From positions 3,906,001 to 3,970,000 of the forward strand of contig OZ365119.1 of NCBI GenBank assembly GCA_977030845.1: a DNA stretch of 64,000 nucleotides. Reading direction: 5' to 3'. Shown here piece by piece: positions 18,032 to 63,252 of this stretch (the first letter of the stretch is position 1; every line of letters begins with the position of its first letter). The position numbers and the translations under genes are program-made. The notes below the pieces were generated by a model, which saw only the letters and a list, made by a program, of their open reading frames with translations, did no database searches and was not told the origin of the DNA. This stretch comes from Fimbriosthenelais zetlandica. Taxonomy: Eukaryota.

Positions 18032-18064
18032 GCAGTGCATCCATGATCCTAGCTGATAGGTGTC

Positions 18065-18365
18065 CATTTCTTTTAGTTAGAATTTTTATAGAGCCTGTTA
18101 TGGGTGAATACCAGCTCACACTCTTGATTACTCAAGTTTCTCGTATGATTTTCAGCTGGGGGCTCTTTCTATGTGCATAACTACATTGCCTTCTGTGCAA
18201 TGGATATTTCTAGGTGCATGTGCTCTAGAACATATGTACAACAGTGAGGAGGGAGGCATTGGAAATGCCTTGGACAACTCGGGGGATTGAACCGCCGACC
18301 CTTCGATCATTGATCAATCACCCTGTATGAGCTGGCGCTCTAACCAACGGAGCTAACTCCCCTCC
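18065..18365 (-). mobile_element. tRNA-derived SINE, near full-length copy
   Basis: Minus-strand head with A box TAGCTCCGTTGGTTAGAGC and B box GGTTCAATCC but no acceptor-stem pairing. Body and A-rich tail recur at four other sites. Confidence 0.75.
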
Positions 18366-19205
18366 CCTTTTGGTAACATTTGTGGTTACAAAATCCTGAA
18401 ACTGCTGACAACTGGAACTGTTTGAGTTCGAATGTTCGAATGGACATGCTGTTATCATTGCTCAAGTTTCCTTGATGGTCCCATGGAGAGATTTCAAATT
18501 AAACCTGAAATCTAAGACACGTTTCATTGCATTGCTAAATTCTGAACTTGAACTATAAGCTCTTAAGGCCTGATTCTCAAAAGATGTCCCGAGTATCGGA
18601 CACCTATAATTACTCAGGCGTTTGGCTTCATATTCTGTTCGGAAGGTCCCTTAGTGATATTTCTAGGTACAATGTTATGGTGATATGGTATATAGATTTT
18701 TATCTTAGGTCAAAAATCAAGGTCAATAAAAAAACCTATAAAGAAAATAAAGTTTTTCTGTATTCCTCTATAGCTATTTCATACATGATCTTTCAGAAGT
18801 CATTGGTTTGTGTAATTCTTGGATTGGTCGTTGTATAATTGAGTTTCAAATGGAAAATGTTGTGCTCCGTTTACGATGGGGAAAGTATCAAATATTCTGG
18901 TCGGAATAATACCGAGGGTGTCATCTCAGAAAAGTTGTCATACTGATCTACGTCCCCCCAACCCCCACCCACCCTCTTTAAGCAATCCCTTTCCACCTCT
19001 ACTGTATAATATATCATGTAAATCTAGATAGCTGTATGTTCAAAGTTTAAACAAACTGGGACAGTATAAAACTAGTTGCCGCTTGCTTAGTTATACTATA
19101 TACCCCAACTAGTGTGACATGTGCCCTACATTTAAGGATAAGCTAACACACATTGATTTTATTGAACAGACCTACGACGAATAGAGGTAAACCCCGAGGA
19201 GAATC

Positions 19206-20816: not shown

Positions 20817-21495
20817 AAGTGAATCCTAGCTTCAAGCTTGGTAATCGTTTGGGGTTACAAGATGGCAAATTTTGAGCTGTGACTTGACATCCAAGAAGAA
20901 ACCACTTGCAGCTCACTGCAGGCTCAAACCGAATATTATCACTCTTCTCATTCTGTTGGAGAGATTTTAAATTAAAAGTGAAATATAATACACGTTTCTT
21001 TGCATAGCTTAATTCTGAATATTGACTAAAGTTGAAGTGCTTATTCACAAAAGAGGCCTTGAAATAAGGACACTTATTGGCATCCTATTGTGTTGAGGGT
21101 CTCTAAGTTATGCTTCTAAGTACATGTGATGTGGTACAGATTTTTATCTTGGACAGTCGAGGTCAATAAAAACATAGGAATCCTGAAAATGGAGGTTTTT
21201 TTGGTATTTTCTCTATAGCTGTAAGTGTACCAGGGCTCGGAGGCTTTTGCTGCTTAGTTATTCGGTGCGACACAATCCTTTTACCACCCCTATTATGTGA
21301 TATATTATGTAGATAGTGGTATTTATGTTCAAAGTTTAAAATAAACTAGGACAGTATACATACTAAATAATAGTTTTCAATCCATGCTACAATTTATGTG
21401 TGACTGGTGTGACATTTGTCCCACATTTAAAGATAACCCAGATTAATTTCATTTAATACTGTCTGTCACTCTGAGAAGTATAAACCCAGAGGAGA

Positions 21496-23110
21496 ATGGC
21501 TATTTCATTGTCAATTGCTGTTGGATTTCTAACCTTCCTTGTGTGTAAGGTACTTTATGACTATGTCTGGCCTACAAGGCCGGCTCTACCAGGACCCTGG
21601 GCATTCCCATTCCTTGGTAACATCCTCCAAATGAGGAAAATGTCATATTTATCACTCACTCACTGAATTAGCTAGACAATATGGCGGATTGTACAAGCTG
21701 CGCTTCTTCCGTACTGAATATGTTGTCGTGAGTGATTTGTCTTTAATTCACGAGGTTTTCGCTTCCGAGGACTGCTCGGCCCGAGCTTATTCTTACCGAA
21801 TGAATCAAATGATCATGAAAGGATGGCCGAATGTCATCTTGGGTTGCTACTCTCCCGAATGGAACGATAGAAAGAAAGCATTGATTCGATCCCTCAGCGC
21901 GTATGGATTAGCAGGTACTAAGTTAGAACACATCACCACTCAATGGATTGACAAACTTTTGAGTGATATGTCACTCGAGAGTGGAGAAGATTCCACCCAG
22001 AGCATCGATTTGAAGACTCACTTCCATTTATGCACGGCTGGGGTCATCACTACATTGATGTATGGAAGGAAGTTAGAGAATTCAGTCATTATGGAACTTA
22101 AGAAAGGTGATTATGCAAAGATGAAGTTTATGGCACCGTTTGGACTCGCTGCATTAATTGATCGGTTCCCATGGGTCAGATTCCTGCCCATTAAGAGCCT
22201 CCAGGAGGGTGTAGCATCTACTGATGTGACATCAGATTGGTTGCAAGCAAGGTTCAAAGAACTAAAAGCACGAGACAAGGCAAAACACCACCAACCTGAG
22301 AAATTGGTTACACTTGGGACCGACGGGCAAAAGGATAATTCTAAGGACAATCCTGTGAGCAAGAACACCAAAATTGAAGGACCAACTGAGGGGGGAAGCA
22401 TTCTACATTCCTTGATGGAACATGTGAACAAAGTTACCAATAAATATTTCAGCGAAGCTGAGATACTCGGGATGTCATCTAATATCGTTTCTGCTGGTTT
22501 TCAAACCACTGCCAACTCCCTTTACTGCTTTTTCCTGATATTACTGAACCATCTGGACATTCAAGAGAAACTCTATGAAGAAATTCGAAATGTTCTTGGA
22601 GAAAGACAACCTATAATGGCGGACAGGAATCGCATGCCTTATATGGCTGCTGCAATTGAGGAACTCCTGCGTTACACAAGTATTTTTCCTATGGCATTGG
22701 ATCATTACACAAGCAAAGACACTGTAATCAGTAGCTACCACATTCCTAAAGATACCCACATCCTCATCAACCTCTGGGCCGTAAGCCACAACGAGGAATA
22801 CTTCCAAAACCCGTGGGAGTTCAAACCTGAAAGATTCATCACAGACGATGGCATGTTGACAATCGGTGGGGAGAAAATGAGAAGTTACAATCTACCATTT
22901 GGCGGAGGGAAGAGAATATGCGCTGCCATGCCCATGGCTAGGAATAGGATCTTTCTCATTGTCACATCTATGCTGCAGAAATTCAAGTTCCTGCCTGAAG
23001 ATGGATCCAACATCCCATCCTGTGACCCACGTCTCTATTGTCCTGGATTTCTTCTTATACCCCACCCTTATAGAGTGCGGATTGAGGAAAGAAAAACGGC
23101 TGGGAGTTAG
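21496..23110 (+). pseudogene. Cytochrome P450 copy 3, frameshifted by a 4-nt CACT duplication near 21652-21666
   Basis: Near-identical to copy 2 from ATG 21496; TCACTCACTCACTGA versus TCACTCACTGA in copy 2; remainder open to 23110. Confidence 0.8.
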
Positions 23111-23771
23111 AAGTGAATCCTAGCTTCAAGCTTGGTAATCGTTTGGGGTTACAAGATGGCAAATTTTGAGCTGTGACTTGACATCCAAGAAGCAACCACT
23201 TGCAGCTCACTGCAGGCTCAAACCGAATATTATCACTCTTCTCGTTCTGTTGGAGAGATTTTAAATTAAAAGTGAAATATAAAACACGTTTCTTTGCATA
23301 GCTTAATTCTGAATATTGACTACAGTTGAAGTGCTTATTCACAAAAGAGGCCTTGAAATAAGGACACTCAGAACACAGAAGGTTTGGCACCGGTATATTT
23401 TTTTTATCTTGAAAAGTTCAACAGTCGAGGTCAATAAAAAGCTAAGAACCCTGAAAATGGAGGTATTTTTTGGTATTTTCTCTATAGCTGTATAAGTGTA
23501 CCAGGGCTCGGAGGCTTTGGCTGCTTATTAGTTATTCGGTGTGACACAATCCTTTCACCATCCCTATGTGATATATTATGTAGAATCTGATAGTGGTATT
23601 TATGTTCAAAGTTTAAAATAAAGTAGGACAGTATACTAAATAGTTTTCAATCCATGCTACAATTTATATGCGACTGGTGTGACATTTGTACTACATTTAA
23701 AGATAACCCAGATTAATTTAATTCATTTAATAGGTCTGTCACTCTGAGAAGTATAAACCCAGAGGAGAATC

Positions 23772-25463
23772 ATGGCTATTTCATTGTCAATTGTTGTTGG
23801 ATTTCTGACCTTCCTTGTGTGTAAGGTACTTTATGGTTATGTCTGGCCTACAAGGCCGGCTCTACCAGGACCCTGGGCGTTACCATTCCTTGGTAACATT
23901 CTCCACATGAGAAAAAGCTCCTATTTAGGCCTCACTGAATTAGCTAGACAATATGGAGGATTGTACAAGCTGCGCTTCTTCCGTACTGACTATGTTGTCG
24001 TGAGTGATTTGTCTTTAATTCAGGAGGTTTTAGCTTCCGAGGCCTGCTCTGCCCGAGCTTATTCTTACCGAATGAATCAAATGATCTTAAATGGTTGGCC
24101 GAATGTCGTCTTGGCCAGCTATTCTCCCGAATGGAACGATAGAAAGAAAGCCATGATTCGCACGTTCAACGCATATGGACAGGCAGGTACTAAGTTAGAA
24201 CGCATCACCACTCAATGGACCGATAAACTTTTGAGTGACATTTCACTCCAGAGTGAAGATTCCACCCAGAGCGTCGATTTGAAGACTCACTTCCATTTAT
24301 GCACGGCTGGGGTCATCACTACATTGATGTATGGAAGGAAGTTAGAAGATTCTGTTATCATGGAACTTAAAAAGGGTGAATATGCCAAACTGAAATTCAT
24401 GGCACCATTCGGACTTTCTGCACTAATTGACTGGTTCCCTTGGGTCCGATTCCTACCTATTAAAAGCATACAGGAGGGTGTAGCATCCACACTTGTGACA
24501 CCAAATTGGTTAGAAGCCAGATACAAGGAGATGAAAGAGCTCGACAAGGCGGTTACCAACCTGCCAGACGACCAAAAGGAAAATCCTGAGGAAAGCACAA
24601 TGAGAGGGAACACCAAAAGTGAACGGCCAAATGACACACAAGTTGGGGATCGAAGCATTCTGCATTCCTTGATGGAACATACAAATAAAGTTACCAATAA
24701 ATCTTTCACCAAAGCTGAGATACTAGGAATGTCATCTAATATGATTTCTGCCGGGTTCCAAACTACTTCAAACTCCCTTTACTGCTTCATTCTCATATTA
24801 CTGAATCATTTGGACATTCAAGAGAAACTCTATGAAGAAATTCGTAATGTTCTTGGAGAAAAACAACCTATAATTTCGGACAGGAATCGTATGCCTTATA
24901 TGGTGGCTGCCATTGAGGAACTGTTCCGATATACAAGCATTTTTCCTATGCCATTGGATCATTACACAAGCAAAGACACCACAATAAGTAGCTACCACAT
25001 TCCTAAAGACACCAACATGCTCATCAACCTCTGGGCCGTAAGCCACAATGAAGAATACTTCCCAAACCCATGGAAATTCAAACCTGAAAGATTCATCACA
25101 GACGATGGCATGTTGACAATCGGTGGGGAGAAAATGAGAAGTTACAATCTACCATTTGGCGGAGGGAAGAGAATATGTGCTGCCATGCCCATGGCTAGGA
25201 ACAGGATCTTTTTGATCATCACAAGTATGCTGCAGAAATTCAAGTTCCTGCCTGAAGACGAGTCTAATATCCCGTCCTGTGATCCACGTCTCTATTGTCC
25301 TGGATTTCTTCTTATACCGCACCCTTATAGAGTACGGATTGAGGAAAGGAAAGATCTGGGAGCTAAGAGTGTTAGGTCATTTAGGCCTAAAGGTTGCCTA
25401 GTAAAGTCTGAAACCTCTCAAGGCATAACTTACAATTTGAGCGCTTCTGCCATTACCAATTGA
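23772..25463 (+). CDS. Cytochrome P450 (clan 2-like), intronless, copy 4, 563 aa with extended C-terminus
   Basis: Same motifs; a 1-nt shift near the paralogous stop extends the tail. Confidence 0.93.
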   Translation: MAISLSIVVGFLTFLVCKVLYGYVWPTRPALPGPWALPFLGNILHMRKSSYLGLTELARQYGGLYKLRFFRTDYVVVSDLSLIQEVLASEACSARAYSYRMNQMILNGWPNVVLASYSPEWNDRKKAMIRTFNAYGQAGTKLERITTQWTDKLLSDISLQSEDSTQSVDLKTHFHLCTAGVITTLMYGRKLEDSVIMELKKGEYAKLKFMAPFGLSALIDWFPWVRFLPIKSIQEGVASTLVTPNWLEARYKEMKELDKAVTNLPDDQKENPEESTMRGNTKSERPNDTQVGDRSILHSLMEHTNKVTNKSFTKAEILGMSSNMISAGFQTTSNSLYCFILILLNHLDIQEKLYEEIRNVLGEKQPIISDRNRMPYMVAAIEELFRYTSIFPMPLDHYTSKDTTISSYHIPKDTNMLINLWAVSHNEEYFPNPWKFKPERFITDDGMLTIGGEKMRSYNLPFGGGKRICAAMPMARNRIFLIITSMLQKFKFLPEDESNIPSCDPRLYCPGFLLIPHPYRVRIEERKDLGAKSVRSFRPKGCLVKSETSQGITYNLSASAITN

Positions 25464-45438: not shown

Positions 45439-46593
45439 ATGGACTGGGTTGGTATGGCCGGGACTTTGAGTCCCATTGAGTGGTCCCAGACTAACAGCAC
45501 ACCAGCTTGCCACCCTGGGAAAAGCCAAGAATGGTGCGAATGGTGCGAATGGTATGACATTTTCACTCACCGGGCAGATGTCCTACAAGACATCATGTAC
45601 CCGATCATTTCCATCACTGGCATTGTCCTAAACACCCTCAGCATCCTCATGATGCTCAAATCAAGCCTGAGACACAGATCCGTTGGGGTATACCTCCTCC
45701 TGCTCGCTATTTTCGATCTTGTCTTTTGCACATCAGGGCTCATTTTTGCTCTCTTCGAAGCTTCTGGAAACCGACAAGACGGGCGTGCGCTTTGTAAAAA
45801 ATGGACTTATATAGACATCCTCGCTCCAACTTGTAGTTCTTGGATGATTGTATCACTAACTTTAGAACGGTTGATCACTGTTGTTGCCCCTCAAAAAACA
45901 GCCAAAATATGTACCCGTAAAATGGCTTGGAAAATATCGGCAGGGATTGTTTTGGTGCTGGTACTTCTAAACACATACGCTTTGTTCATATATGATATCC
46001 CAGACGAACCAAATCCAGAATGTTTCCTGTCGGATAAATACAACAGCAACATGGTTGGGATTACTTTTGGAGTCCTGCACCTTTTGGTGTATTCCCTAGT
46101 ACCTACAGTTATTATCATTGTCAGTAATACTGTGTTGGTTAAGAAGGTCTGGGAGGCTGCCAAGGCTAGAAATGAGGATGAGAAAATCAGCAGTGAATCA
46201 AAACAGCTCATCTGTACTCTAGTGACAGTCAGTACTGTCTTTGTCGTCTTCACACTGCCCTTATCATGCTTTCTCATTTCGGATTTCATACCTGAACATT
46301 TACTTTATTACCCCAAAACACGAGAACTCTGGTTCACTATTTTGTCAATTTTGCTCTGTTTGAACCATGCCGTGAATTTCTTGCTCTATGTCATTGGTAG
46401 TCCAATCTTCAGGGCAGAATTCAAGTTTATCTTTTGTAACCGCTGTAGAAAGGAAACTGCTAATGTTGATGATGATATTGATATGACTTCGGTTGCCTCA
46501 GGTCGAAGTAATGTATCAGAGACTCGCTGGTCTGCTTATGAAGTACCTCCAGAAGATGCAGAAAATACAGACCAAAAAGAAACAAGATATTGA
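45439..46593 (+). CDS. Intronless class-A GPCR (FMRFamide/peptide-receptor-like orphan), copy 1
   Basis: Seven hydrophobic segments; GIVLNTLS (TM1), LAIFD (TM2), ERL (TM3), FTLP (TM6), NFLLY (TM7). Confidence 0.95.
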   Translation: MDWVGMAGTLSPIEWSQTNSTPACHPGKSQEWCEWCEWYDIFTHRADVLQDIMYPIISITGIVLNTLSILMMLKSSLRHRSVGVYLLLLAIFDLVFCTSGLIFALFEASGNRQDGRALCKKWTYIDILAPTCSSWMIVSLTLERLITVVAPQKTAKICTRKMAWKISAGIVLVLVLLNTYALFIYDIPDEPNPECFLSDKYNSNMVGITFGVLHLLVYSLVPTVIIIVSNTVLVKKVWEAAKARNEDEKISSESKQLICTLVTVSTVFVVFTLPLSCFLISDFIPEHLLYYPKTRELWFTILSILLCLNHAVNFLLYVIGSPIFRAEFKFIFCNRCRKETANVDDDIDMTSVASGRSNVSETRWSAYEVPPEDAENTDQKETRY

Positions 46594-47771
46594 TGAGTGA
46601 AATACCACATATATAATGTAACTAATCTTAATAATTCCATGATCATTTGAAAGCAGACTCTTACCTCTTAATTTTCCCTGTGCAATCAAGATTCTCACAG
46701 TGGCAATCGAGGTTCAGAGTCATTTCTTTTGGTCTGGCGAGAAAAGAATGATGTATATTTGGTCATTTGCAGTATCTTGTTACATTTTGACTAAAAATAA
46801 AATGTGGGAACATTTTAAAGCATTTTAAAGTCATGATTTCCCGAATGCTCTATTCCCTTTTTGCCCTGGAGTGACGTGGTAGACGAGATCATACTAACTA
46901 TCCTCAATGATTTATTTGAGATACCAATCTGATATGAATTCCAGACTAAATTAGTGAAATTTTAGCTCAATTATAGTTGGCATACTGCCCCTTTATCTGG
47001 TTGATCCATCGGTTTTTGGTTAATTTAATGACTTGGGTCTCAGATAATAGCTTATCTGATAAGCGAATCGATTTGTCATTCAGTCAAGGCTCTCTTCCTG
47101 CCCGAGTTAGATAATCTTTAGATATTTTAAAAATAGGATAAGTGTTTTGTTTATCAATGTAAGTGCCAAATGTACTTGTACAAAGTTAAGCCTTGCATCA
47201 ATCATTTAAGCCTTGCATCATCAATCTTTCAAAGATTTAGGCCTGGCTCTGAACCCCAATAACCTAGGCTGTTAGGTATAGAGGCCTACCACATGTTAAA
47301 AATTAAAAAAAGATGTTTATTGGCTAACAAGGAATTTGGCTAATTAAATTCACATTTGACTAAAAGTCTTCCTGATCTAGCTCTATCCCTGGGCAAGGGA
47401 TATGCATGGGAAGAGGGAGAGGGAAGGAGCTAGGCCAATGAGGCTCTAGGAGGAGACTTGAAGAGGACCATGCAGTGCTTTTTTCATGTTGCTATTGCTA
47501 CAGCATTCATGTTACCACTTGGAAGTCCCCAGAAATATGACTTAGAAAAATCATTGTTCTGCATGTGGAATACTCGTAATGCTAAGTAGGCTCCTTTGTA
47601 CATCTTGATTGACTAGGTCCTTGATTAAATGCTTATAATACCCCTTGCTCAACCTATCCATACCTCTGCACCCTGCTTTCCCCTTTCACATTTTACCATA
47701 TTTCAACGTTATTCTTTCCATATTTAATTTACAACTTAAATGTCCATGGCACTTTGCAGAGCCAAGCCATC

Positions 47772-48887
47772 ATGGACCACTCCAACACTAACCAGTCAGT
47801 TGCCATCGAGCATCACCACATTTACTCTGACGACTGGGTCAAAGCCTACGAGGCCTACATTAACGATGGCACTCTCCTTGACGAGACCCTAACACCCTTC
47901 ATCTCTGTCCTCGGTATGACCCTCAACATCCTAAGCATCATCATGATGTTCAAATCAACCCTTAAAGCCCAATCCACAGGGGTTTATCTACTCTGGTTGG
48001 CTTTGGCTGACTTCACATACTGTTCCTCTAACTTGGCCTCAGTTTTTGATGATTATGTCTTGGGTCTAAGCCTTGATAATCAGATCGCATGTAAAGTTTG
48101 GTCATATGTTGATGTCATCGCCCAGACTGTTAGCTCTTGGATGATTGTCATGGTCATATTTGAACGCGTTCTCTCAGTGCTACAACCACGTAAAACTGCA
48201 GAATTCTGCATCAGAAAAATGGCATGGAAGATTGCTATTTCGGTTATTGTACTCTTAATGCTTCTGAATATATATGCCCTTTTTCTGTATGATATCCCAA
48301 ATGAACCAGAACCTGAATGTTTCATCGCTGACAAGTACCACGAACATGAATCTGCTTTAGCATTTGCCATCTTCCACTTGCTCCTCTATTCTGTACTTCC
48401 CTCTTTGATCATTGTCACTGGTAACTCCATTGTCATCTGGAAAGTGAAGGTTGCAATTCGTAGTCGAGTTGGGCGTCCTCCCACCAAAGAATCCCAAACA
48501 CTTATCTGTAGTTTGATAACAGCGAGTGTTGTCTTTGTCGTCTGCACCATCCCCTTGTCCTGCTTTGTGTTGTCTGATTTCATTCCTGAAGATGTCCTAT
48601 ACATTCCAGCTTCAAGGGAGCTTTGGTACACTATATGTAGTCTTCTAAACCTCCTAAATCATTCAGTTAACTTTATTCTTTATGTGTTGGCTCGGCCCAA
48701 GTACAGGAAAGAGTTTGGTGCTCTGTTCTGTCGTGCTTGTAGGAAGCGAGGACGTGGGAATGAGAATAATGATTTGACTCGGATAGATACAGTTGTGAGT
48801 GAATGGGATGGAGAGAATGAAATGTCCAGTATGGATTTGATTATGCATGATTCAGGAGTGTCTGCCATTCTTGATATCAAAATATAG
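47772..48887 (+). CDS. Intronless class-A GPCR, copy 2
   Basis: First ATG at 47772 after acceptor tttgcag; LALAD, ERV, CTIP, NFILY. Confidence 0.95.
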   Translation: MDHSNTNQSVAIEHHHIYSDDWVKAYEAYINDGTLLDETLTPFISVLGMTLNILSIIMMFKSTLKAQSTGVYLLWLALADFTYCSSNLASVFDDYVLGLSLDNQIACKVWSYVDVIAQTVSSWMIVMVIFERVLSVLQPRKTAEFCIRKMAWKIAISVIVLLMLLNIYALFLYDIPNEPEPECFIADKYHEHESALAFAIFHLLLYSVLPSLIIVTGNSIVIWKVKVAIRSRVGRPPTKESQTLICSLITASVVFVVCTIPLSCFVLSDFIPEDVLYIPASRELWYTICSLLNLLNHSVNFILYVLARPKYRKEFGALFCRACRKRGRGNENNDLTRIDTVVSEWDGENEMSSMDLIMHDSGVSAILDIKI

Positions 48888-50510
48888 CTATATTTTACAG
48901 AAATAACAGAATTAACATCTTGCCTACTGGCCCTCACCCAGCCCCAGCCCCCCCCCCCCCCAGCCATCATGATTAGGCCTATGTGAGCCCCCCCCCCCCG
49001 ACCATGCTTATGTGATGCTAGTTGTTTCAGTAGCAGACTTAAAAACTACTGGTCATGATTTTCAGCCGAGTGCTTTTTGGTGCGATTCTAATCTGATTTG
49101 TCATAATCTAATATGTGTAGACAGGTAGGATTTGGGACAGTGAGAGATAAAGGGATGGTAAAACATCATAGGTGTCTTGAATGGAGATGTTTTATAATAT
49201 ATAATCTAGCACAAGGTATCCTCAAATTGTAAATAGCTGCATCATAGTTTAGAAACACCTATGTGAAAAAGTTGTGAACTAGATTTAGGATGTCCTGTTG
49301 CAAACATTATTATATATGCAACTCGGACTACAGGAAGCAACTTCTCTTTTGTCTCCCCATGGCTGCCACCATCTTCCTCCCCAAATCCACCCCACCCCTT
49401 TTATAGTTATAGATTATTTTAATCTATCTTAAATAAGACATATTTTAATCTATCTTAAATAAGACAACATTCTCGTGTTGTGTTGTGGAAATTCACCACA
49501 CAGATACAAATGTAAAATAAATAAATAAGATAGGTCCAAACCAGACCATATCCTTCTTAATCAACTTGACAGCACTAGTGCATGGCATCTATTCTATGGC
49601 TGTCCGATTTTTAGTTAACTTTCTACATTTAGAAAAATCATAAAGATTTATTCCCTGAAACACTTTTTCGTAATAAATCTAATATTTTTAAAATGGACTT
49701 AAGCAGTCCTTTCCATGCTGGCTGTTGTCATGTAGATGGGTGAAGTTAAAGATTCATTCATACATTGCCGATTTACAAGGCGATTCTGCATTGCCCCTAG
49801 CTAGATATTGCCGATTTTCAAAGCGATTCTGCATTTCCTATTTCATTGTTTTACCATGTGCACTTACCACCATTGATGAGAAAAACGCCGCACATCAGAT
49901 GTAGTCGGCTGGCCTTCGTTGGCGCCCCTGGACAATTTCTTTCCATATTAATCACTTGAAATGTTAAAACCACATTTTAATTAACCACATTTCAATGATT
50001 AAAAGTCGATTTTAATGACATTTAATATGATCATTAATGCAGTAACGCATCAGTTACTACTATCTACATCTCCTGATTTTTCTTTGAGTATGTCATATTT
50101 TTGGGGAAGATGCCAAGAAGAATTATGCTTCAAACCACAGGCGGTATTTGTCTAGTTTGGCTTGAAAGTCTTCAGACATATTCAAAGCGCAGTTCAGACT
50201 TCTAAAAGGGAGAGACCAACTTACAGGTCAAAAAGCTGCTAAGATATTATTTCCCATCGGGGAATGACAAAGTTTAAAGTGAGCAAAAGTTGTTCTAATT
50301 GTATAGCAATTTATTGCGCCCTCCTTGAATTATTAGGGATATATTGCCTCGGGAACAATTTCCACTGGAAATATTATTTACAAGAAAACATTAACATTGC
50401 AACCAAATAGGACCATTTTGTACATGTCAATATAACGAATCCATCTCGAATGAGTCGGGGATGTTCTAGAGCTTTCATTTCTTCAGTGACATCCTAAAAA
50501 GAAAGCAAAC

Positions 50511-51548
50511 ATGAACAACTCAACATTAGACATGTTCGACAAGGATTATGAAAGATATACCCATTATGGGGATATCCTTGACATGGTGATAGGTTGTGTC
50601 TTCTCCACTCTTGGCATGATCCTCAACACCCTAAGCATAATCATGATGTTCAAATCAAGCTTCAAAGACCAATCAGCTGGAGTCTACCTCCTCTTCCTTG
50701 CCATCTTCGACCTCATATTCTGCATCTCTGGTTTTGGAACATTCATATCAGACACCGTCAGCTACAAGCTTGACAACAGTACAACCTGCAAGATCTGGAC
50801 ATACATTGACACAATGTCAACCACCTCGAGTTCTTGGATGATTGTGACACTGACGATTGAACGCGTTGTTGCCATGGTGTTACCTCAGAAAGTCCCCTCC
50901 TTCTGCACTCGGAATAAAGCCTGGAAAATATCCGCTGGCATCCTAACCCTCCTTCTCTTCCTAAATATGTATGTGGTCTTTATTTATGACATCCCAGACG
51001 AACCCGAACCGGAGTGTTTTCTCTCGGACAAATACAATGACAATCTCTATGGTCTAGCATTTGGTCTTCTGAACCTCCTCCTCTACTCACTCGTCCCTGC
51101 GGCTATCATAATCATATGCAATGCCGTTCTGATCAAAAAGGTCAAGAAAGCAATTGAGGTGCGCATTTCCGGTGGTCCTTCTGAGACTTTCACTAAGGAA
51201 TCCAAACGGCTTGTGTACACTCTTATAACAGTCAGTACTGTCTTCGTCCTTTGCACTCTTCCTCTCTCATGTTTTCTGTTATCAGATTACGTCCCCAGGG
51301 AGCGGCTGTACATGCTCAAGACCAGGGAGCTTTGGTTCAGTATTTGTGATGGACTAATCCGTGTAAATCACTCAGTTAATTTTGTCTTGTATGTTCTGAC
51401 TGGACCCACGTTCAGGAGGGAGTTTCGTAGGATGTTCTGTGTCTGTTGTAAGGGTGCGGATGGCAGGATTGAACGGGAGTTTAACATGACTACTGTAGGT
51501 CTGATGCTTGAGAGGCATGAGACTGAAATGACTAACACTGTAGTCTGA
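50511..51548 (+). CDS. Intronless class-A GPCR, copy 3
   Basis: LAIFD, ERV, CTLP, NFVLY. Confidence 0.95.
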   Translation: MNNSTLDMFDKDYERYTHYGDILDMVIGCVFSTLGMILNTLSIIMMFKSSFKDQSAGVYLLFLAIFDLIFCISGFGTFISDTVSYKLDNSTTCKIWTYIDTMSTTSSSWMIVTLTIERVVAMVLPQKVPSFCTRNKAWKISAGILTLLLFLNMYVVFIYDIPDEPEPECFLSDKYNDNLYGLAFGLLNLLLYSLVPAAIIIICNAVLIKKVKKAIEVRISGGPSETFTKESKRLVYTLITVSTVFVLCTLPLSCFLLSDYVPRERLYMLKTRELWFSICDGLIRVNHSVNFVLYVLTGPTFRREFRRMFCVCCKGADGRIEREFNMTTVGLMLERHETEMTNTVV

Positions 51549-55627: not shown

Positions 55628-56634
55628 TCTCTTCCCAGAAATCGCTATTTGGATTTCTTATAATTATATGGATTTCTCTTAAAAATCTTCCGTCATTAAA
55701 ATTCCCTTGCGCACTAGTTGCTTATTACGATGGACCAATAAGTATGTATACATCTTTTGGTAACATTTAAAAATTCAAATTATGCTTATTAAAAAGCAAA
55801 AAATATCCTTTATGAATAATCACAAGGACAAGCGCGTGTTGCCCTTATTCTCTCGAGAAAATAATAATTATTTCTATTTTAACTAATTCTTGTATCACAA
55901 GTAACATAGTAGCAATATATTTATATTATTTCAACCTCGAATAGTCAAGGTACTTATTCACATATCCATTATAGTAGTATTCGTAAATTCATTAATTTTC
56001 TTACTTCAATGAACCTTTACAGACATTCTTAGTTAGATTCTCTATGTTTATTCACCTTATTAGGCATACCTTGCAATGTCCAAGTTTTGTCGATACGTAT
56101 CGTATGGTATTGACTATGGAAGATTGCCGAAAAGACCTGACAGACCTGTCAGTATTATTTGAACTTTCAGGAATTCTAAAACCTTATGTCAACATAGCCA
56201 TTATTTCAATGGGCAAACATTTAATAAAACTATATCCCAAATCTAATCTTTCCCTGCCAATGTCTTGGCATTTTATAATTTGAATTCTGTAATTTCCATG
56301 AACATTCTATGCAAAAGAACTTTAACTTGCCTTTAGAAACCCACTGTCCATCTTCCCCATCTTTTGACATTCCTTGGTCAATACAAATTCACTTCAATCT
56401 TTACTGAACCCTTGCTCAATACAAATACAACTTTTCTGTATCATTTAAATTTCTTTTGTGAGTAAAATGCACCTTCTTCACTGTCTCTATTTCCTTTTTC
56501 AATTAGATACACCTTCACTGTATCTATTTCCTTTGTCAATAAATTTCCCTTGTCAATAAAATGCACCTCTTTCACTGTATGTATCAATTTAAATTTCCTC
56601 AATAAAATGCACCTCCCGGACGACCTAACATAAT

Positions 56635-59600
56635 CTAATAACATTCCTTTGTTTTCTTACAGATGAAGTAATGGCTTGCGGTGCATTCTGAGCTGATCCA
56701 CCTGTAGGTCTTATCTCTAAACACCTGTAGGACCAGACAGTTTCTTCTCCTCCGGTATCCTCGCTCCTCGTCCGTCGCCCAGTTCTGATAGGTCAGTATG
56801 GTGGTTGTGAATCGTTTCTCGTCGTACCAGACCCACTGCGACATATTCCGGGAGTAGATTCCAGAAGTCCAGTAGGTCCGGTTAGTCTCTGTGCCTATTG
56901 AGAAATAATTTTTTTAATTTTTTTTTTAATTTTTTTTTCATAGAACCTGTTATGGGTGAATACCAGCGCACACTCTTGATTACTCAAGTGTCTCGTATGA
57001 TTTTCAGCTGGGGGCTCTTTTATGAATAACATTCTAATAGAGCAAGGAATAGAGCACTTGAATGCGACCAAAAATGGAGAGAAAATTATTTAGTTTTAGT
57101 TGTCTTGAGGGAAGGGTCAGGTCTGCAGCCGGTCATTTCTGTTGGGTGGGTGGGGGGGGGGGGGGGGGGGGGGGAGTGGTTCGGGGGGGGGGGGCATATT
57201 ATATTCAAACTTTGGATATTTTCTAATTTGCCTGGACTATTCAACTATGTACTGGGAATCGTTTTTTTAATTATTATTTTATTGGGGGGAGGGGGTCTGG
57301 CCCCAAATAACAAATTAAATTCAAACTTGGGACATTTCCATCAAATGTTATGAATCATTCTAGAACTATATACAGGGAATCTGATCTTGCTCCAAATAAA
57401 TGGAATTAAATTAGAGAAATCAACTTCGGAACATTTGAGATGTCCCCTTACATTTAGGAAATATTGAGTATGAAAATAACTGAAAACACGCCATACTCCA
57501 AATAAAAGTATCTAAATTTAGAAAAAACAACTTCCGAACATTTGAGATGACCCCTTATGAGTATGAAATCAATTGAGTAAAAAAATAACTGTGACGCTAT
57601 AATAACATAGACCTACTTTGAATTGTTGAATGTACTGTCGAAGCCAGATAGTTGTCCCCTTTTGAGTATGAAATCAATTGAGTATAAAAATAACTGTAAT
57701 GCTATAACCTACTTTGAATTGTTGAATGTACTTTAGAAGCCAGATAGTTGTCCTCGTTCAGATTAGTAATATCCATGAGGTGGCTGTTTCGTGCACTAAT
57801 ACAATCCAAGGCCGCCTCACCAAATGTCTTTCTTGTATTCATTACCAGGTAGCAGTTCCCCACGCCATAATCTCCACTGATGAATTCACTAGGACAAACT
57901 CCAGTCGCTCTATCACCTGGAAGAAATACGGTAAGTCAGTGCTTTTTTCACCAATTTATTTTTTCAGGTTTTGTTTTGATTTGTGAATGTATTATCTTGT
58001 TACTGTTAAGCCAGGAATACACTATTCCGATTCTCTATCCGGAGCCATCCGATAGCTGCCCATTCCCTGTTGAGCACTCATACTTTAGCATTGGGTGAAT
58101 AACAATTTGGTCTAATTTTAGCGAGATGAAATGTGGGTGATTGGTTTTCTGTATTTGAATTATTCTGACTACATTCTACAAAGTAGGTTTTCAATGTAAT
58201 CTGTATATATTATATAGATACGTAGCTTATGATTAGACGAAAAATGAAACAACAAGTAACAACAAAGAAAGGAGTTTGATGAAATGATTATTAATGAAAT
58301 AAATGAGATGGCATTGGTGTTAGGATGAGGTATGAGGTATCAGGCCTGGAAATTATTGGGATGATATCTATCATATGTTACATAAATTATCAGCTCGCCA
58401 AATTCTGTTTTTGGTGAGCAGAAATGAGCGAATGATGATTGCATTTCTACTCGCCAAAATCTCTTTTGGTGAGCAGAAATTCGCAGGCGATGGGTTTTCT
58501 TACCTCCTCCTATTTTCTTGAGTTCATTATCTATCTTGGTAATTTCTCTGAGGATCGTTTCCGCTTTTCCATCCACGTCATTCACCTTTCCAAGGATGGC
58601 GTCCGGTTGGTCACACGAGAATGCTTTAGTTGATAAAGAAAAAGGAATAATTATGAGTATTTGGGAATGGACTTAGAAAACTACAGTAGGAAAGAGATGA
58701 ACTAGTACTTAGTTTCTACACTGTGAAGCAAACATTCTGGGATTTGCCACAAACATAAGCCTACACGGGCATTGCATTGTGCAAGGATAAGTCAAAACTA
58801 AAAGAGAGTTTGTGCACATACATTTTTCCAAATTAAGAGTGTCAACACAATTTTAGTGTTTTAAATGGTGGAATATTGCATAGCCACAAGTGACACTCGA
58901 ATTTATGACAGCTCATAATGTTTTAGGACCAAGTACAGACTAAGTTTAGTTTTTGTGTACATAACACTAGGGCAATATATAAGACTATTGGCACCGATGT
59001 TGTGAATATATTTTTTTTCCTATTGAAATATGCTTCATTATGCCATGAGATATTTTCCTGATATACATAATTTTAACTGCATCTGTCAGTTAAATATAAT
59101 TTTAACTGCATCTGTCAGTGAAACCTAATTTTAACTGCATCTGTCAGTTAAACATAATTTTAACTGCATCTGTCAGTTAAACATAATTTTAACTGCATCT
59201 GTCAGTTAAACATAATTTTAACTGCACATATATGTGTTAGTCAGGTTGACATATATCTAGCAAATACTCACGGACACCTGAGCCAGGTGGTCCTGGTGGT
59301 CCCTGAGCTCCTGGTGGTCCAGGGCGGCCCGGTGCTCCCCGACAGCCCTGATTAGAAAAAAAATATACTTCAACATTGGTTTTATGTTTATAAAGAGATT
59401 CATAAAGCATTTAATCAATTGATAGATCATACCCCCATTACAGAATTTTAAGATTTCGAAAACGCATTGCACAAGAATCAAAATATGACATGCAAGATCT
59501 GCCCCCAAATCACATCAGATCTGACATGCACAGATCTATGAGAGAATCATCCCGATCATGATCGTATCTTCATACACATTATGCCGATTTTTAATCTGAA

Positions 59601-62600
59601 TTCAATTTGATCTGATGAGACCGTTAAGATCATGGAATCGAGCCCCAGATCGGTGTAGTGTAGATCGGTCTTAAGACAGAATTTCTGCAATGGCCCTAAG
59701 AAAAAGAGTACATGACTCAAGGTATTCCTATTATATATTATTATTATGAACTCTAATAGTTTTAGCTGGTTTGTATTCTAGGTTATAGAATCCCTCACCA
59801 TCTTAAGTCAGTTTTCACAATTGGTTTGACTATTATTTGCGAGAGTCTTAAGATGCGATAGGCGTTCTGCAATGCATCTCATCATGCCTACAAGATTCTT
59901 AAATTAAGACGCTCTTAAGATAGAACTTCTGCAATGGAACTAATATGGCCCTAAGACAGAATTTCTGCAATGACCCTAACAAAAAAGAGTGCATATGACT
60001 ATTATATATATGAACGCTAATAGTTTTAGCTGATTTGTATTCTAGGTTATAGAATCTCTCACCACACAGAGCGCCTCATCCCTGCACCCTTCTGGGGGAC
60101 AGAAATAGATGAATGGTTGGAAAGATCGCTCCCAGGGGAAGGTTTCGATCCTCACGCGGGTGAAATCGATCTGTCGTGGAGGTGTGTTACTCTCCACATT
60201 ACCTGAAACAGGAACAGAGTGCTTATCAGTCTTATTAGTTCAAATGTTGGTTCCTTATCCGTTTCTTTAGTTAAAATGTTGGTTCCTTGCCAGTCTTTTA
60301 GTTCAAATTTTGGTTGCTTATCATTCTTTTTATTTGAAATGGTTTTTCTTTATTAGTTTCTTGAGTTCAAATGTTGGTTGCTTATCCGTTTCTTTAGTTC
60401 AGATTTTGGTTGCTTATCCGTTTCTTGAGTTCAAATGTTTGTTTCTTTTTTTTCAAAGTTAGTTGAAAACACCAATTATTTGATACAGTATAGCAGAGAT
60501 ATTTTAAGGGCAATCTAATGCTGCTATGAAAAGGAAATAGTTTGGCCTTAATGATTTAAACTAGATCAAGGCAAGTTAAGATATTACAATGTTGCCCTTA
60601 ATTTGTTGATTGGTAAATTTACAAACTTGTGAGAAGCCACAGCCATAGGGCTAACTTCATGGATATCTGGATTAGGAATTAGTGTAGAAAGTGGACAAAA
60701 TTGGGGGACAAGGGTGGGTAGACTTGGATGATTTTTTATGCAACTTTGCTTTTCTAAGGGCTAGATCCATGTATTTGGATAATTTCATGATGCTAATAAT
60801 TATAGAGTAAGGGCTAGGGCTGTGTATTTGGATGATTTGTGATGCTACTATGCATATTTTCTATTTTAAGAGCTGGTCGAGTCTTTCATTTGGATGAGCC
60901 CCCAGCTGAAAATCATACGTAAAACTTGAATCATCAAGAGTGTGAGCTGGCTTCACCAACAATATGGCTCTATAAAAATTGTAACTAAAAAAAAAAAAAA
61001 AAAATGACAATGCAACTTGGCCACTTATATATAAAGGTCATGACATTAGTTCGCATCCTAACTTAAACATGCACACTCACCTAAAGTTATACTATGGAAC
61101 CTGACACCCAGTGGGTCTCTGCCTGGTCTGTTACGGTTTCGCTGTGCACTGTTACTGTACGGGATGGGAATCTTGTCAGTCATCCCCATGATTCCTACGT
61201 AATGTTCCCGCGTCAGGTTTACTAGTTGTGTAAAATTCATCTGGAAAAATTCAAAGTTTGTAATAAGTTAATCTGTTTTAGCTTTGCTTGGTGCGTTGTA
61301 CACATATGTTCTAGAAATATCCATTGCATACAAGGCAATGTAGTAATGCACATAGAAAGAGCCCCCAGCTGAAAATCATACGAGAAACTTGAGTAATCAA
61401 GAGTGTTTCACCCATAACAGGCTCTATACACATTTTAATTATTAAAAATCAAATGGCAGAGCTTGAATGAATCCCAAGTGAGATGCCTTTGGAAATGTTT
61501 TCCTTACGACTCTGGATCTAGGGCCGTTAGAATCACACATAGCTTTGCGACTATATCTTAATTTTTAGATGTGGTCGCTTGGGACTCTAGCAACTTCTGC
61601 TTAAAGACTGTTGCTGCTAGTTTCAACACAATAGTTGCATAGATTAAGTCCATTGTAAAAAAAAAATAGTTAAACTGCCCCACCATTTGAATAATAATAC
61701 AAAAATCATACTTGTGTAATCAAGAGTTTGAGTTGGTATCCACCCCTAACAGGCTCTATATAAATTGTTAAAAAAAAAACAAAAAAACAAAAACGTATCA
61801 CTCACCGCATACCACGTTTCATCGTTTCGTTTTATTTGCCGCCATCTGTTGTTGACTCCTGGGTAATCCAGTGTTAATTTGAACTGAAAAATAAAACAGA
61901 GAAGAAATGAGATTAATAAGATGTTTTAATGCATCATTCACAAGCCTGAATGACTTTTTAAAAATTGTCTTGTCCCATGCCCATCTTCGTAAAAATCAAC
62001 CCAAGCAATATTTCAGTTATGATGTACTTATGAAGCCCGACATTCTCCAGCCCGATTTTCATCCCGATTTTGCGATCTTAAGCGATCACAGGCGATCGGG
62101 ACCCAAAAGAAAGATCCGTTCCGATTATCGGGCTGGTGGATGCCAAAATCTTGGGATCGGCGCCAATATTTCAATGGTAAATCAATAGAGAAATGATCCG
62201 TAACGATTTTATTTTGATCTTTGCCGATCACAAAAATCGGTGACCTCAAAGATCGTACAGTGGATGTCGGGCTTTAAAAGGCCGAAACCTTTGACAAATG
62301 GTAGTGACTTCGAGTGATTCAACCTGTCCTCTTTAGAAATAATGGCGACTTCAAAATTCTAAAAAATCCCCCCAAATAATCTCACCTCTTGTAAGTCCTG
62401 TCCAGACACAACAGGTGCCCACAAGTCGAGGGCGAAGGGGTCGTTAGTACAGAGTTTGACCGCCACACCCCCGTACGATCCCGGCGCTACTGTCGTGTTA
62501 AAATCGATCACCTCCCGCCGTGGGTTGTCCATCAAGAAGTTATTACAGCATGACCCTTCTGAAAAAACACAAAACAAATGTCTTGCAAAATAATGACAGG

Positions 62601-63252
62601 CTCTGGGCTAATTCTAACCACACATTTCTTTTAGCAAAAAGTGCTAAGACACCAAATTTCTTTTAGCAATTTGCAGTTGGAGTTTTCAATTGAGTTGTCA
62701 ATTTGGAGGAAACATTGCTAGTTGGATTTTTCCTTCAATATTTGTGTGATTTTGCGGTGGTTAGGTGTGATTTTTATTTCGCAAAATTAGCGAATAACAG
62801 TCATTTTCATTTAGCAAAGTAGCATTTTTATTCGCAAATTGCGACAGTGCGATCGGGTAGAGCGAGCCCAGACAGGGTGGGTGCCGAATGTTCTGGTGTC
62901 AAGAGATATGGAAACTGTGGTAATTGGAGAGTTGCCAATTTGTTGTCAGATTATCAGAGTTGCTAGATCAGGCCTATACCTGACATAAAATCTGCTTAGA
63001 AATTTGATGTTTTGATGTTCACAGGTTTTAAGATGGGGAAAGTACTTTAGTTCTGAGGCTTAATGTATGGAAAAATTGTTGACCGTCAGAATTTTTGTTT
63101 CATGAATAATTGATTTTGTACTGTCATACTTTTATATTGATATTATTATCCATTATATACATACCTTGACATGAGGAAGGACAATATCCTTCTTGTGCTT
63201 TTGTGGATAGGGAGAGACTAAGTGCTACTAGCAATATTTTCCAACCCGCCAT
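56635..63252 (-). CDS. Secreted collectin-like protein, 9 coding exons, 432 aa (signal peptide - unknown domain - short collagen - neck - C-type lectin domain)
   Basis: Exons 63252-63165, 62558-62386, 61883-61806, 61240-61081, 60202-60063, 59347-59272, 58623-58504, 57916-57713, 56894-56635. All introns are GT-AG with compatible phases; total 1299 nt with no internal stop. Confidence 0.88.
56942..57020 (-). mobile_element. 5'-truncated SINE copy
   Basis: Matches 18090-18170. Confidence 0.8.
59085..59225. repeat. About 29-bp minisatellite (ATAATTTTAACTGCATCTGTCAGTTAAAC)
   Basis: About 5 adjacent units, intronic. Confidence 0.9.
60230..60445. repeat. About 33-bp minisatellite (TTAGTTCAAATGTTGGTTGCTTATCCGTTTCT)
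   Basis: About 6 diverged units, intronic. Confidence 0.8.
60895..61005 (+). mobile_element. 5'-truncated SINE copy with poly(A) tail
   Basis: GAGCCCCCAGCTGAAAATCATACG...GGCTCTATAAAAATTGTAACTA followed by an A run. Confidence 0.8.
61296..61430 (+). mobile_element. 5'-truncated SINE copy (further fragment at about 61712-61790)
   Basis: Reverse complement of the 18090-18245 body. Confidence 0.8.
62034..62273. mobile_element. MITE family B copy
   Basis: Inverted homologue of 2166-2395; ends GTGGATGTCGGGCT followed by ttaa. Confidence 0.85.

What the first reader, a model, noticed from the sequence alone, without database searches (positions are those of the whole stretch)
56635..63252. Hidden nine-exon collectin-like gene with an unrecognised N-terminal domain
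Seen: phase-consistent splicing gives signal peptide MAGWKILLVALSLSLSTKA; a Cys cluster (YCPSSCQEGSCC); about 175 aa of beta-rich-looking sequence I cannot name (…ALDLWAPV…FKLTLDYPG…EHYVGIMG…PIPY…); a second Cys cluster (FCPPEGCRDEALCVGC); GCR-GAP-GRP-GPP-GAQ-GPP-GPP-GSG on its own exon; a heptad neck (ILGKVNDVDGKAETILREITKIDNELKKI) on its own exon; and a two-exon C-type lectin domain. Established: collagen-neck-CTLD is the collectin layout, best known from chordate innate immunity, where the N-terminal segment is short. Inference: a trimeric two-headed pattern-recognition or matrix protein with a new domain combination, possibly convergent.
Basis: partly seen in the sequence, partly recalled or inferred. 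Interest (0 to 1): 0.8.

Follow-up and report, generated by a model that had tools for sequence, protein, structure and literature searches.

The report
Collectin-like lectin of an unnamed family
This is a real, intact nine-exon gene for a secreted protein from a small, unnamed family of marine-worm-type lectin-like proteins. In this animal alone it has gained a short collagen segment, so it resembles vertebrate immune collectins by convergence, not descent.

Summary
Nine minus-strand exons (63252 to 56635), all with GT-AG introns, splice into one 430-residue frame: signal peptide, Cys-flanked domain of about 190 residues, eight G-X-Y triplets on their own exon, a four-heptad neck, and a two-exon C-type lectin domain (CTLD).

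No RNA run was listed, so the junctions rest on comparison. Four full-length relatives, one a spliced mRNA, align collinearly. All 15 core cysteines and two intron positions with phase are shared.

None of the four relatives has collagen. Here the triplets sit between two conserved cysteines just before the neck, so the collectin layout is a lineage-specific gain.

The N-terminal domain matches no Pfam family or solved-structure sequence. Medium-confidence models of two relatives give a beta jelly roll nearest the Cwp84 lectin-like domain, phage tail modules and carbohydrate-binding modules. The same fold recurs unnamed in annelid, sponge and other proteins.

The CTLD keeps only one of five canonical calcium/sugar ligands (EPN is EER, WND is WIS).

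Best reading: a secreted, probably trimeric, two-headed binding protein. Function is untested.

One note (s1-196133) reports an unnamed lectin-like sandwich elsewhere in this genome; I did not test a link.

The parts
63165..63252 (-). Exon 1 (aa 1-30): ATG, signal peptide (MAGWK + hydrophobic core, ...TKA|QEG), first Cys pair (C24, C28)
   Evidence: Phase-1 intron at the same place as in the relative's genomic locus L021 and as the splice seen in mRNA L026 versus genomic L009/L010.
62386..62558 (-). Exon 2 (aa 30-87): start of the N-terminal domain, conserved motif CC..LMD...I......PG.Y..V...C.....W.P
   Evidence: Exhaustive phmmer search found only three true relatives. Alignment A1 has 15 invariant columns.
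61806..61883 (-). Exon 3 (aa 88-113): N-terminal domain, strand region FKLTLDYP
   Evidence: Collinear with relatives across the 2|3 junction. The phase-0 intron after it is shared with L021.
61081..61240 (-). Exon 4 (aa 114-167): N-terminal domain, conserved ...HYVGIMG...K.PIPY, plus a basic loop of about 11 residues absent from relatives
60063..60202 (-). Exon 5 (aa 167-213): end of the N-terminal domain (FPWERSF matches WPRTF in relatives) and Cys cluster FCPPEGC...C
   Evidence: tblastn with P0009 gives 37% identity over 27 aa.
59278..59347 (-). Exon 6 (aa 214-237): G-C then eight G-X-Y triplets (GCR GAP GRP GPP GAQ GPP GPP GSA). Lies between the conserved CGC-type and SCxPD cysteines.
   Evidence: Only G-X-Y run in the window. 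Weak Pfam Collagen hit, E 9.5e-4. Absent from all four relatives. The 70 nt are needed to keep the frame.
58504..58623 (-). Exon 7 (aa 237-277): conserved SCxPD cysteine and a four-heptad neck
   Evidence: a/d hydrophobic fraction 0.90, reached by 0 of 2000 shuffles. Relatives score 0.80, reached by 9-22 of 2000 shuffles.
57713..57916 (-). Exon 8 (aa 277-345): first half of a long-form CTLD (TGxCP, GxCY, first core Cys)
   Evidence: Pfam Lectin_C positions 2-36. 37% identity to P0009.
56635..56894 (-). Exon 9 (aa 345-430 plus TAG): second half of the CTLD. EER in place of EPN, WIS in place of WND, basic loop RGYRRRRN, family-specific C-terminal K-x-C-Y.
   Evidence: Pfam Lectin_C positions 38-107, E 2.9e-8. 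Alignment to E-selectin and others..
56047..56225 (-). Candidate polyadenylation signals downstream of the stop (ATTAAA at 56225-56220, AATAAA at 56052-56047)
   Evidence: Motif scan only; not verified.

Best explanation
The locus is an intact gene for a 430-aa secreted protein. It belongs to a small, so far unnamed family with this layout: signal peptide, a Cys-bounded beta jelly-roll domain of about 190 aa, a cysteine staple (CGC...C), a four-heptad coiled-coil neck, and a long-form C-type lectin domain that ends in K-x-C-Y.

Shown here:
- the gene model;
- family membership;
- the domain order;
- the absence of collagen in all four full-length relatives found;
- the loss of the canonical Ca2+/sugar site in the CTLD.

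Inferred:
- The neck, pinned by the conserved cysteines, makes a parallel oligomer, most likely a trimer.
- In this lineage eight G-X-Y triplets arose between two staple cysteines. The adjacent coiled coil could nucleate a mini triple helix there, which would lengthen and stiffen the stalk.
- The molecule would then carry a cluster of lectin-like jelly-roll heads at one end and a cluster of non-canonical CTLD heads at the other.
- It would act as a multivalent bridging or agglutinating protein. The N-terminal heads would bind glycan. The CTLD would bind a non-canonical ligand, possibly a polyanion given its RGYRRRRN loop.
- The setting could be immunity or the extracellular matrix.
For: Gene model:
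- Nine exons, all GT-AG, one frame.
- Pfam Lectin_C is split exactly across exons 8 and 9.

Family:
- L024 carries an uninterrupted 411-aa ORF collinear with residues 22-430 (25% identity, E 3e-36 against the 25 fetched loci only).
- P0009, P0010 and P0011 have the same layout.
- All 15 core cysteines are conserved.
- Two intron positions with the same phase are shared with genomic locus L021.
- P0011 comes from a spliced mRNA. It matches genomic contigs at 99-100% in two blocks separated by an intron of about 410 nt.

Neck and collagen:
- Neck heptads are present in all five members.
- The G-X-Y run is unique in the window and frame-essential.

N-terminal domain fold:
- Both models hit the same AlphaFold DB clusters (E 2e-5, TM 0.67).
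- Atlas feature scores are 0.94-0.95 to unnamed annelid and sponge clusters. The nearest named families are PF18560 Lectin_like, PHR and DUF4082.
Against: - No RNA evidence in this species; no run was listed.
- The window's own spliced protein has no reference, so it could not be folded or searched whole. The fold comes from relatives only about 25% identical in this domain.
- The models are of medium confidence, and the second half is weak (pLDDT 35-68).
- Eight triplets are few for a stable triple helix.
- The CTLD keeps 1 of 5 canonical Ca2+-site ligands, so it may not bind sugar at all.
- Oligomeric state, ligands and site of expression are all untested.
Confidence: 0.6

Rival explanations
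1. The G-X-Y stretch is only a flexible Pro/Gly-rich spacer, equivalent to the Pro/Thr-rich linker of the relatives, and forms no triple helix. Oligomerisation rests on the coiled coil and disulfides alone, and the collectin likeness is cosmetic.
For: There are only eight triplets. The relatives manage without any collagen and have a Pro/Thr/Ala-rich linker a few residues upstream. The Pfam Collagen score of 19.3 bits is below the 27.2-bit cut-off.
Against: The run is a perfect, uninterrupted G-X-Y register with Pro in 9 of 16 X/Y positions. It sits directly next to a predicted parallel coiled coil and between conserved cysteines, which is the arrangement that nucleates and locks short triple helices in other proteins (established knowledge, not tested here).
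Confidence: 0.3
2. It is a structural component of cuticle, tube or mucus that cross-links glycans and matrix polymers, rather than an immune pattern-recognition molecule.
For: The CTLD lacks the EPN/WND sugar site typical of microbe-binding collectins. [quoted passage not shown] The odd number of conserved cysteines (15) would allow intermolecular cross-links. Notes from other agents report large cuticle collagen genes in this genome (unchecked).
Against: There is no expression or localisation data. Lectin-like jelly rolls and CTLDs are equally common in soluble immune lectins. The neighbouring genes (P450s, GPCRs) give no hint.
Confidence: 0.3
3. It is a true orthologue of chordate collectins that kept the ancestral collagen-neck-CTLD core and added an N-terminal domain.
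For: It has the same order of collagen, coiled-coil neck and C-terminal CTLD, with the neck on its own exon.
Against: - All four full-length relatives lack collagen.
- The CTLD is split by an intron, whereas vertebrate collectin CRDs are single-exon (established knowledge).
- EPN/WND are absent.
- Solved-structure sequence hits to exon 9 are weak and mixed: a generic CTLD protein, E-selectin, snake-venom lectins, MBP-A and langerin, with E 1e-3 to 0.7 and no preference for collectins.
Confidence: 0.03
4. The model is a pseudogene or a chance or chimeric assembly of exons that is not expressed as drawn.
For: No RNA run was listed. No identical or near-identical protein exists in the protein collections searched.
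Against: There are 430 codons without a stop across nine exons with canonical splice sites. All 15 family cysteines are retained. The alignment to relatives runs through every junction, and two intron positions are shared.
Confidence: 0.07

Closest known systems
Unnamed family represented by P0009, P0010, P0011 and the ORF L024:256-1488 (metagenome, metatranscriptome and Logan transcript records; the nearest Atlas cluster is labelled Annelida)
   Same: Signal peptide, N-terminal jelly-roll domain starting CC..LMD, 15 conserved cysteines, CGC...SCxPD staple, heptad neck, non-canonical long-form CTLD ending K-x-C-Y, and two shared intron positions.
   Different: The relatives have no G-X-Y. They carry a Pro/Thr/Ala-rich linker before the CGC motif. 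The window protein is only about 25% identical overall, has two extra N-terminal cysteines, an 11-residue basic loop in the N-terminal domain and an Arg-rich CTLD loop.
Vertebrate collectins (MBL, SP-A, SP-D; group III C-type lectins)
   Same: Secreted, with a collagen-like stretch, then an alpha-helical coiled-coil neck on its own exon, then a C-terminal CTLD. Cysteines near the collagen could form interchain bonds.
   Different: - A 190-aa folded domain replaces the short N-terminal segment.
- There are 8 triplets, against roughly 20 or more in collectins (my knowledge).
- The CTLD is split by an intron.
- EPN/QPD and WND are absent.
- There is no Lys in the MASP-motif position (PMC2856262).
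- The collagen was acquired independently.
Ascidian glucose-binding lectin (GBL) and other invertebrate coiled-coil CTLs
   Same: Coiled coil plus CTLD without collagen, as in the four relatives. PMC8605247 describes GBL this way, and PMC8878817 notes that secretory invertebrate CTLs may carry N-terminal coiled-coil or collagen repeats.
   Different: Those proteins have no N-terminal jelly-roll domain. No sequence relationship was tested.
Cwp84 lectin-like domain (PDB 4ci7; Pfam PF18560 Lectin_like) and CBM/PHR/DUF4082-type beta sandwiches

Membership tests
Collectins (group III C-type lectins) | Short N-terminal segment with one to three cysteines | tested here: not met
   About 195 residues (aa 20-215) of folded, Cys-bounded domain precede the collagen.
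Collectins (group III C-type lectins) | Collagen-like region of repeated G-X-Y forming the stalk | tested here: inconclusive
   Eight uninterrupted triplets, the only such run in the window. The Pfam Collagen score is below its cut-off. Whether a triple helix forms is not testable here.
Collectins (group III C-type lectins) | Alpha-helical coiled-coil neck directly before the CTLD | tested here: met
   Four heptads with a/d hydrophobic fraction 0.90, reached by 0 of 2000 shuffles. The pattern is conserved in four relatives.
Collectins (group III C-type lectins) | C-terminal C-type lectin domain | tested here: met
   Pfam PF00059: exon 9 scores 34.8 bits against a 22.6-bit cut-off, and exons 8 and 9 together cover profile positions 2-107.
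Collectins (group III C-type lectins) | Ca2+-dependent sugar site (EPN or QPD, a Glu two residues before the Cys, WND) | tested here: not met
   The alignment to E-selectin gives EER for EPN, Arg for the Glu, and WIS for WND, so 1 of 5 ligands is kept. The relatives also lack WND.
Collectins (group III C-type lectins) | Common descent of the collagen-neck-CTLD unit | tested here: not met
   All four full-length relatives lack G-X-Y. Exon 9 shows no preferential similarity to collectin CRDs. No formal phylogeny was run.
MBL/ficolin-type lectin-pathway initiators | [quoted passage not shown] | tested here: not met
   The collagen segment has no Lys. The nearest match is P-G-R-P-G-P, with Arg at the position where the paper calls Lys essential.
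Unnamed N-domain/neck/CTLD family (P0009, P0010, P0011, L024 ORF) | Collinear full-length similarity | tested here: met
   tblastn of the model against L024: residues 22-430, E 3e-36 (against the 25 fetched loci only). Four-way alignment.
Unnamed N-domain/neck/CTLD family (P0009, P0010, P0011, L024 ORF) | Fifteen conserved cysteines including CC, CGC, SCxPD and the C-terminal K-x-C-Y | tested here: met
   Cysteine positions listed, alignment. CVGC in the window corresponds to CGC in the relatives.
Unnamed N-domain/neck/CTLD family (P0009, P0010, P0011, L024 ORF) | Shared intron positions and phases | tested here: met
   A phase-1 intron just before the CC motif and a phase-0 intron in mid-domain (WYA|MNF here, YVT|KKF in L021). 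Other introns differ.
Pfam PF18560 Lectin_like / CBM-type jelly rolls | Significant match to the family profile | tested here: not met
   There is no Pfam hit in the N-terminal domain of the window exons or of four relatives at E up to 10. A profile of the domain against PDB sequences gave nothing below E 1.5.
Pfam PF18560 Lectin_like / CBM-type jelly rolls | Same fold | tested here: inconclusive
Pfam PF18560 Lectin_like / CBM-type jelly rolls | Carbohydrate binding | not testable with these tools
   Needs glycan arrays or binding assays.

The most novel reading that the evidence does not exclude
This would be a protostome 'collectin' caught at birth. In a family of disulfide-stapled, coiled-coil, two-headed lectins, a functional collagen triple helix arose inside the staple in one annelid lineage. 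The result is a trimeric stalked molecule with a new lectin-like head opposite a remodelled CTLD. It would serve as a soluble recognition or bridging molecule. It would be the first described protostome protein with the collagen-neck-CTLD layout. It would also be a natural experiment on how collagen stalks get added to lectins.
Probability: 0.2. Interest if true: 0.7.

Novelty: new variant of a known kind. Interest (0 to 1): 0.45.

Why it matters
Collagen-stalked lectins (collectins, ficolins, C1q) are the recognition arm of complement-type immunity. A 2021 paper states that no protostome MBL/ficolin homologue with a collagen-like region had been reported (PMC8605247).

This gene shows the same layout being assembled independently. 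The collagen segment lies between conserved cysteines of a family that otherwise lacks collagen.

It also puts a name-worthy module on the map. The jelly-roll domain of about 190 residues has no Pfam family, and its fold recurs unnamed in annelid, sponge and other invertebrate proteins.

The practical value is modest until expression, oligomeric state and ligands are measured.

Tried and rejected
- **RNA evidence.** Two searches for runs (a 6-kb stretch, then exon 9 alone) listed none.
- **Whole-protein analysis of the window gene.** The spliced protein has no reference. Exons were used singly, and relatives stood in for it.
- **Exon-wise Pfam for the N-terminal domain.** This gave only noise: hGDE_N at E 0.17 and EAD9 at E 0.034.
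- **Repetitive hits in the exhaustive exon 2 search.** P0001, P0002, P0003 and P0005 were rejected as compositional matches.
- **TNF/C1q-like trimeric jelly roll.** Foldseek PDB hits to TL1A, FasL and C1q have TM 0.3 or less and E above 0.07, so I rejected this.
- **Cnidarian minicollagen-type Cys-rich domains.** I considered these from memory for the Cys clusters. I dropped the idea because the cysteines are those of the family alignment.
- **A second structure model with a slightly deeper alignment.** It was not better (pLDDT 64.6), but it reproduced the same matches.
- **Neck plus CTLD search (P0011 residues 228-434).** It returned only P0011 itself, P0009 and P0010, which were already known.
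- **Accession text search.** A search for the ERR run numbers found no paper. I could not verify the source organisms of the relatives.
Full report
**The gene model**

I anchored the exon ends on the sequence and checked splice sites and phases.

The model has nine exons:
- 63252-63165
- 62558-62386
- 61883-61806
- 61240-61081
- 60202-60063
- 59347-59278
- 58623-58504
- 57916-57713
- 56894-56638, followed by TAG at 56637-56635

All eight introns are GT...AG. The CDS is 1290 nt and encodes 430 aa.

First, the exon 8 donor that keeps frame is GTAGGT at 57712. An earlier GT gives a frameshift and a stop in exon 9. Second, the last collagen triplet is G-S-A, because the codon is split across the intron.

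Exon 6 (70 nt) cannot be skipped without losing the frame. It is the only run of four or more G-X-Y triplets on either strand of the whole 64-kb window.

**What can be named by sequence**

Pfam finds Lectin_C and nothing else. Exon 8 covers profile positions 2-36 and exon 9 covers 38-107 (E 2.9e-8). Exon 6 gives a sub-threshold Collagen hit.

Aligned to E-selectin and other solved CTLDs, the second half of the domain has EER where EPN stands. It has Arg where the Glu two residues before the cysteine stands, and WIS where WND stands. So only one of the five canonical ligands of Ca2+ site 2 is kept.

The neck (aa 246-274) has hydrophobic residues at 9 of 10 a/d positions. None of 2000 shuffles reaches that.

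**Looking for relatives**

No RNA run was listed for the locus, so I relied on comparison.

An exhaustive phmmer search of exon 2 against 1.84 billion representative proteins found seven hits. Four are compositional. Three (P0004, P0006, P0007) are short exon-like fragments that share the motif CC..LMD...I......PG.Y..V...C.....W.P. They lie on short metagenome contigs.

A scan of JGI metagenome contigs with that alignment gave 18 loci. One of them, L024, carries an uninterrupted ORF. Its 411 residues align with residues 22-430 of the window protein from end to end (25% identity, E 3e-36 against the 25 fetched loci only).

Using that ORF and then a profile, the 5.8-billion-cluster collection yielded three more full-length proteins: P0009 (417 aa), P0010 (421 aa) and P0011 (434 aa). 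It also gave several exon fragments. All carry Pfam Lectin_C only.

P0011 comes from 1.5-kb Logan contigs of two ERR runs. Its DNA matches genomic metagenome contigs L009 and L010 at 99-100% in two blocks separated by about 410 nt. It is therefore a spliced mRNA, and the family is expressed in at least one other species.

A search with the neck and CTLD of P0011 returned only P0011 itself, P0009 and P0010. The family is small and tight in the data available.

**What the family alignment shows**

All members have:
- a signal peptide;
- the N-terminal domain starting at CC;
- a Cys pair at its end;
- a CGC motif, followed three residues later by SCxPD;
- a heptad neck;
- a long-form CTLD beginning TGxCP...GxCY and ending K-x-C-Y.

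All 15 cysteines of the smallest member are conserved in the window protein, which has two more near its N-terminus.

The alignment runs through every one of the window's eight junctions. Apart from the collagen exon itself (junctions 5|6 and 6|7), no junction needs more than a single-residue gap.

Two intron positions are shared, with the same phase, with the genomic copy L021. One is a phase-1 intron just before the CC motif. The other is a phase-0 intron in mid-domain (WYA|MNF here, YVT|KKF there).

This is independent support for the model, although it is not RNA from this species.

**The collagen segment**

None of the four full-length relatives has any G-X-Y. They have a Pro/Thr/Ala-rich linker before CGC, and then CGC-x3-C runs straight into the neck.

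In the window protein the corresponding cysteines (C215 and C240) are separated by 24 residues, and these are the collagen-like run.

So the collectin-like layout is a lineage-specific gain inside a probable interchain disulfide staple, next to a probable trimeric coiled coil. This is convergence with chordate collectins, not orthology.

Four further differences from collectins:
- The CTLD is split by an intron.
- The EPN/WND site is absent.
- There are only eight triplets.
[quoted passage not shown] The nearest stretch here is P-G-R-P-G-P.

**The N-terminal domain**

It matches no Pfam family at E up to 10, either in the window exons or in four relatives. A profile of it finds nothing in PDB sequences.

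Because the window's spliced protein has no reference, I modelled relatives instead:
- P0009 residues 24-196 with a 17-row alignment: pLDDT 69, pTM 0.69.
- P0011 residues 42-215 with 20 rows: pLDDT 65.

Both models are all-beta. The first 100 residues are confident and the second half is weak.

Both models also hit the same AlphaFold DB clusters (best E 2e-5, TM 0.67). These hits are unnamed segments inside multidomain proteins annotated with cadherin, EGF, sushi, kringle or kinase domains.

The ESM Atlas agrees, independently of my models. The feature search with P0011 residues 44-215 scores 0.94-0.95 to unnamed clusters labelled Annelida and Porifera. The nearest named families are PF18560 Lectin_like, PHR and DUF4082. 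The shape search gives TM 0.64-0.68 to the same unnamed clusters.

**How it most likely works**

Shown:
- a secreted multi-domain protein with the order given above;
- membership of the unnamed family;
- a non-canonical CTLD.

Inferred:
- The neck forms a parallel coiled coil, most likely a trimer as in collectins. The conserved CGC...C cysteines staple it.
- The eight triplets, flanked by those cysteines and nucleated by the coiled coil, form a short triple helix that extends the stalk.
- Clustered N-terminal lectin-like heads and clustered CTLD heads give a two-ended multivalent binder that bridges or agglutinates.
- The odd number of conserved cysteines leaves one free for higher-order links.
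- The window protein's Arg-rich CTLD loop (RGYRRRRN) is not shared by the relatives. It hints at an anionic ligand, which is speculation.

Whether the role is immune recognition or matrix, cuticle or tube assembly cannot be decided here.

**Context and literature**

Pfam confirms the neighbouring genes:
- four tandem single-exon cytochrome P450 ORFs;
- three single-exon rhodopsin-type GPCR ORFs;
- part of a Cys-loop channel.

None suggests a function for this gene.

Notes by other agents of this scan call the genome probably annelid and report an unnamed lectin-like sandwich inserted in an A2M gene. I did not test either.

Reviews note that secretory invertebrate CTLs may carry coiled-coil or collagen repeats (PMC8878817). 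An oyster complement paper states that no protostome MBL/ficolin homologue with collagen-like regions had been reported (PMC8605247). My text searches found no description of this family.

**Verdict**

The gene is a new variant of a known kind. It is a CTLD protein of an undescribed family that has convergently acquired a collectin-like stalk.

Interest is moderate. The layout and the unnamed domain are real. However, expression in this species, oligomeric state, the triple helix and the ligands are all still to be shown.

Noticed in passing
window 57408-57758 (intron 8 and the 3' end of exon 8): Tandem duplication with a period of about 100 nt. The last 46 nt of exon 8, together with its GTAGGT donor (57707-57758), are repeated at 92% identity 96 nt downstream in the intron (57611-57662). 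Further partial copies are families D4 and D5. The copy has no evident acceptor, so it may be a decoy donor or an inert duplication.
   Followed up: partly
window 59033-59255 (intron 6) and 60223-60458 (intron 4, just upstream of exon 5): Two minisatellites inside the gene: six copies of a 29-nt unit and six copies of a 32-nt unit.
   Followed up: no
window 56935-57020, 60896-60950, 61356-61406, 61710-61764: Four copies, in both orientations, of an interspersed element of about 55 nt (core GAGCCCCCAGCTGAAAATCATACG) in introns 8, 4 and 3. Identity is 84-98%. It is probably a short mobile element.
   Followed up: no
window 59736-59800 vs 60000-60064: The first 62 nt or so of intron 5, including the donor region next to exon 5, are duplicated 264 nt further into the intron at 91% identity.
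   Followed up: no
window 16397-25463 (+): Four tandem single-exon cytochrome P450 ORFs of 473-563 aa. Two were checked and match Pfam p450 at E 1e-83 and 3e-85.
   Followed up: partly
window 45439-51548 (+): Three single-exon ORFs of 345-384 aa. Two were checked and match Pfam 7tm_1 (E 9e-27 and 2e-25), with secondary matches to nematode Srw-type chemoreceptor profiles.
   Followed up: partly
window 8646-9422 and 14483-15226 (+): Two paralogous ORFs of about 250 aa (both starting M..HC.FLQEL..RLT.DHIRRK). The one tested has no Pfam match.
   Followed up: no
L021 5032-5070 (relative's genomic contig): The exon encoding ...LPFCG appears to end at a GT one nucleotide away from the position of the window's intron 5 (C-V|G-C). 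This suggests the intron in front of the collagen exon may predate the collagen. The contig ends there, so it could not be confirmed.
   Followed up: partly
window 57140-57195 (intron 8): A long poly-G tract (about 45 nt with a few interruptions) lies inside the intron.
   Followed up: no
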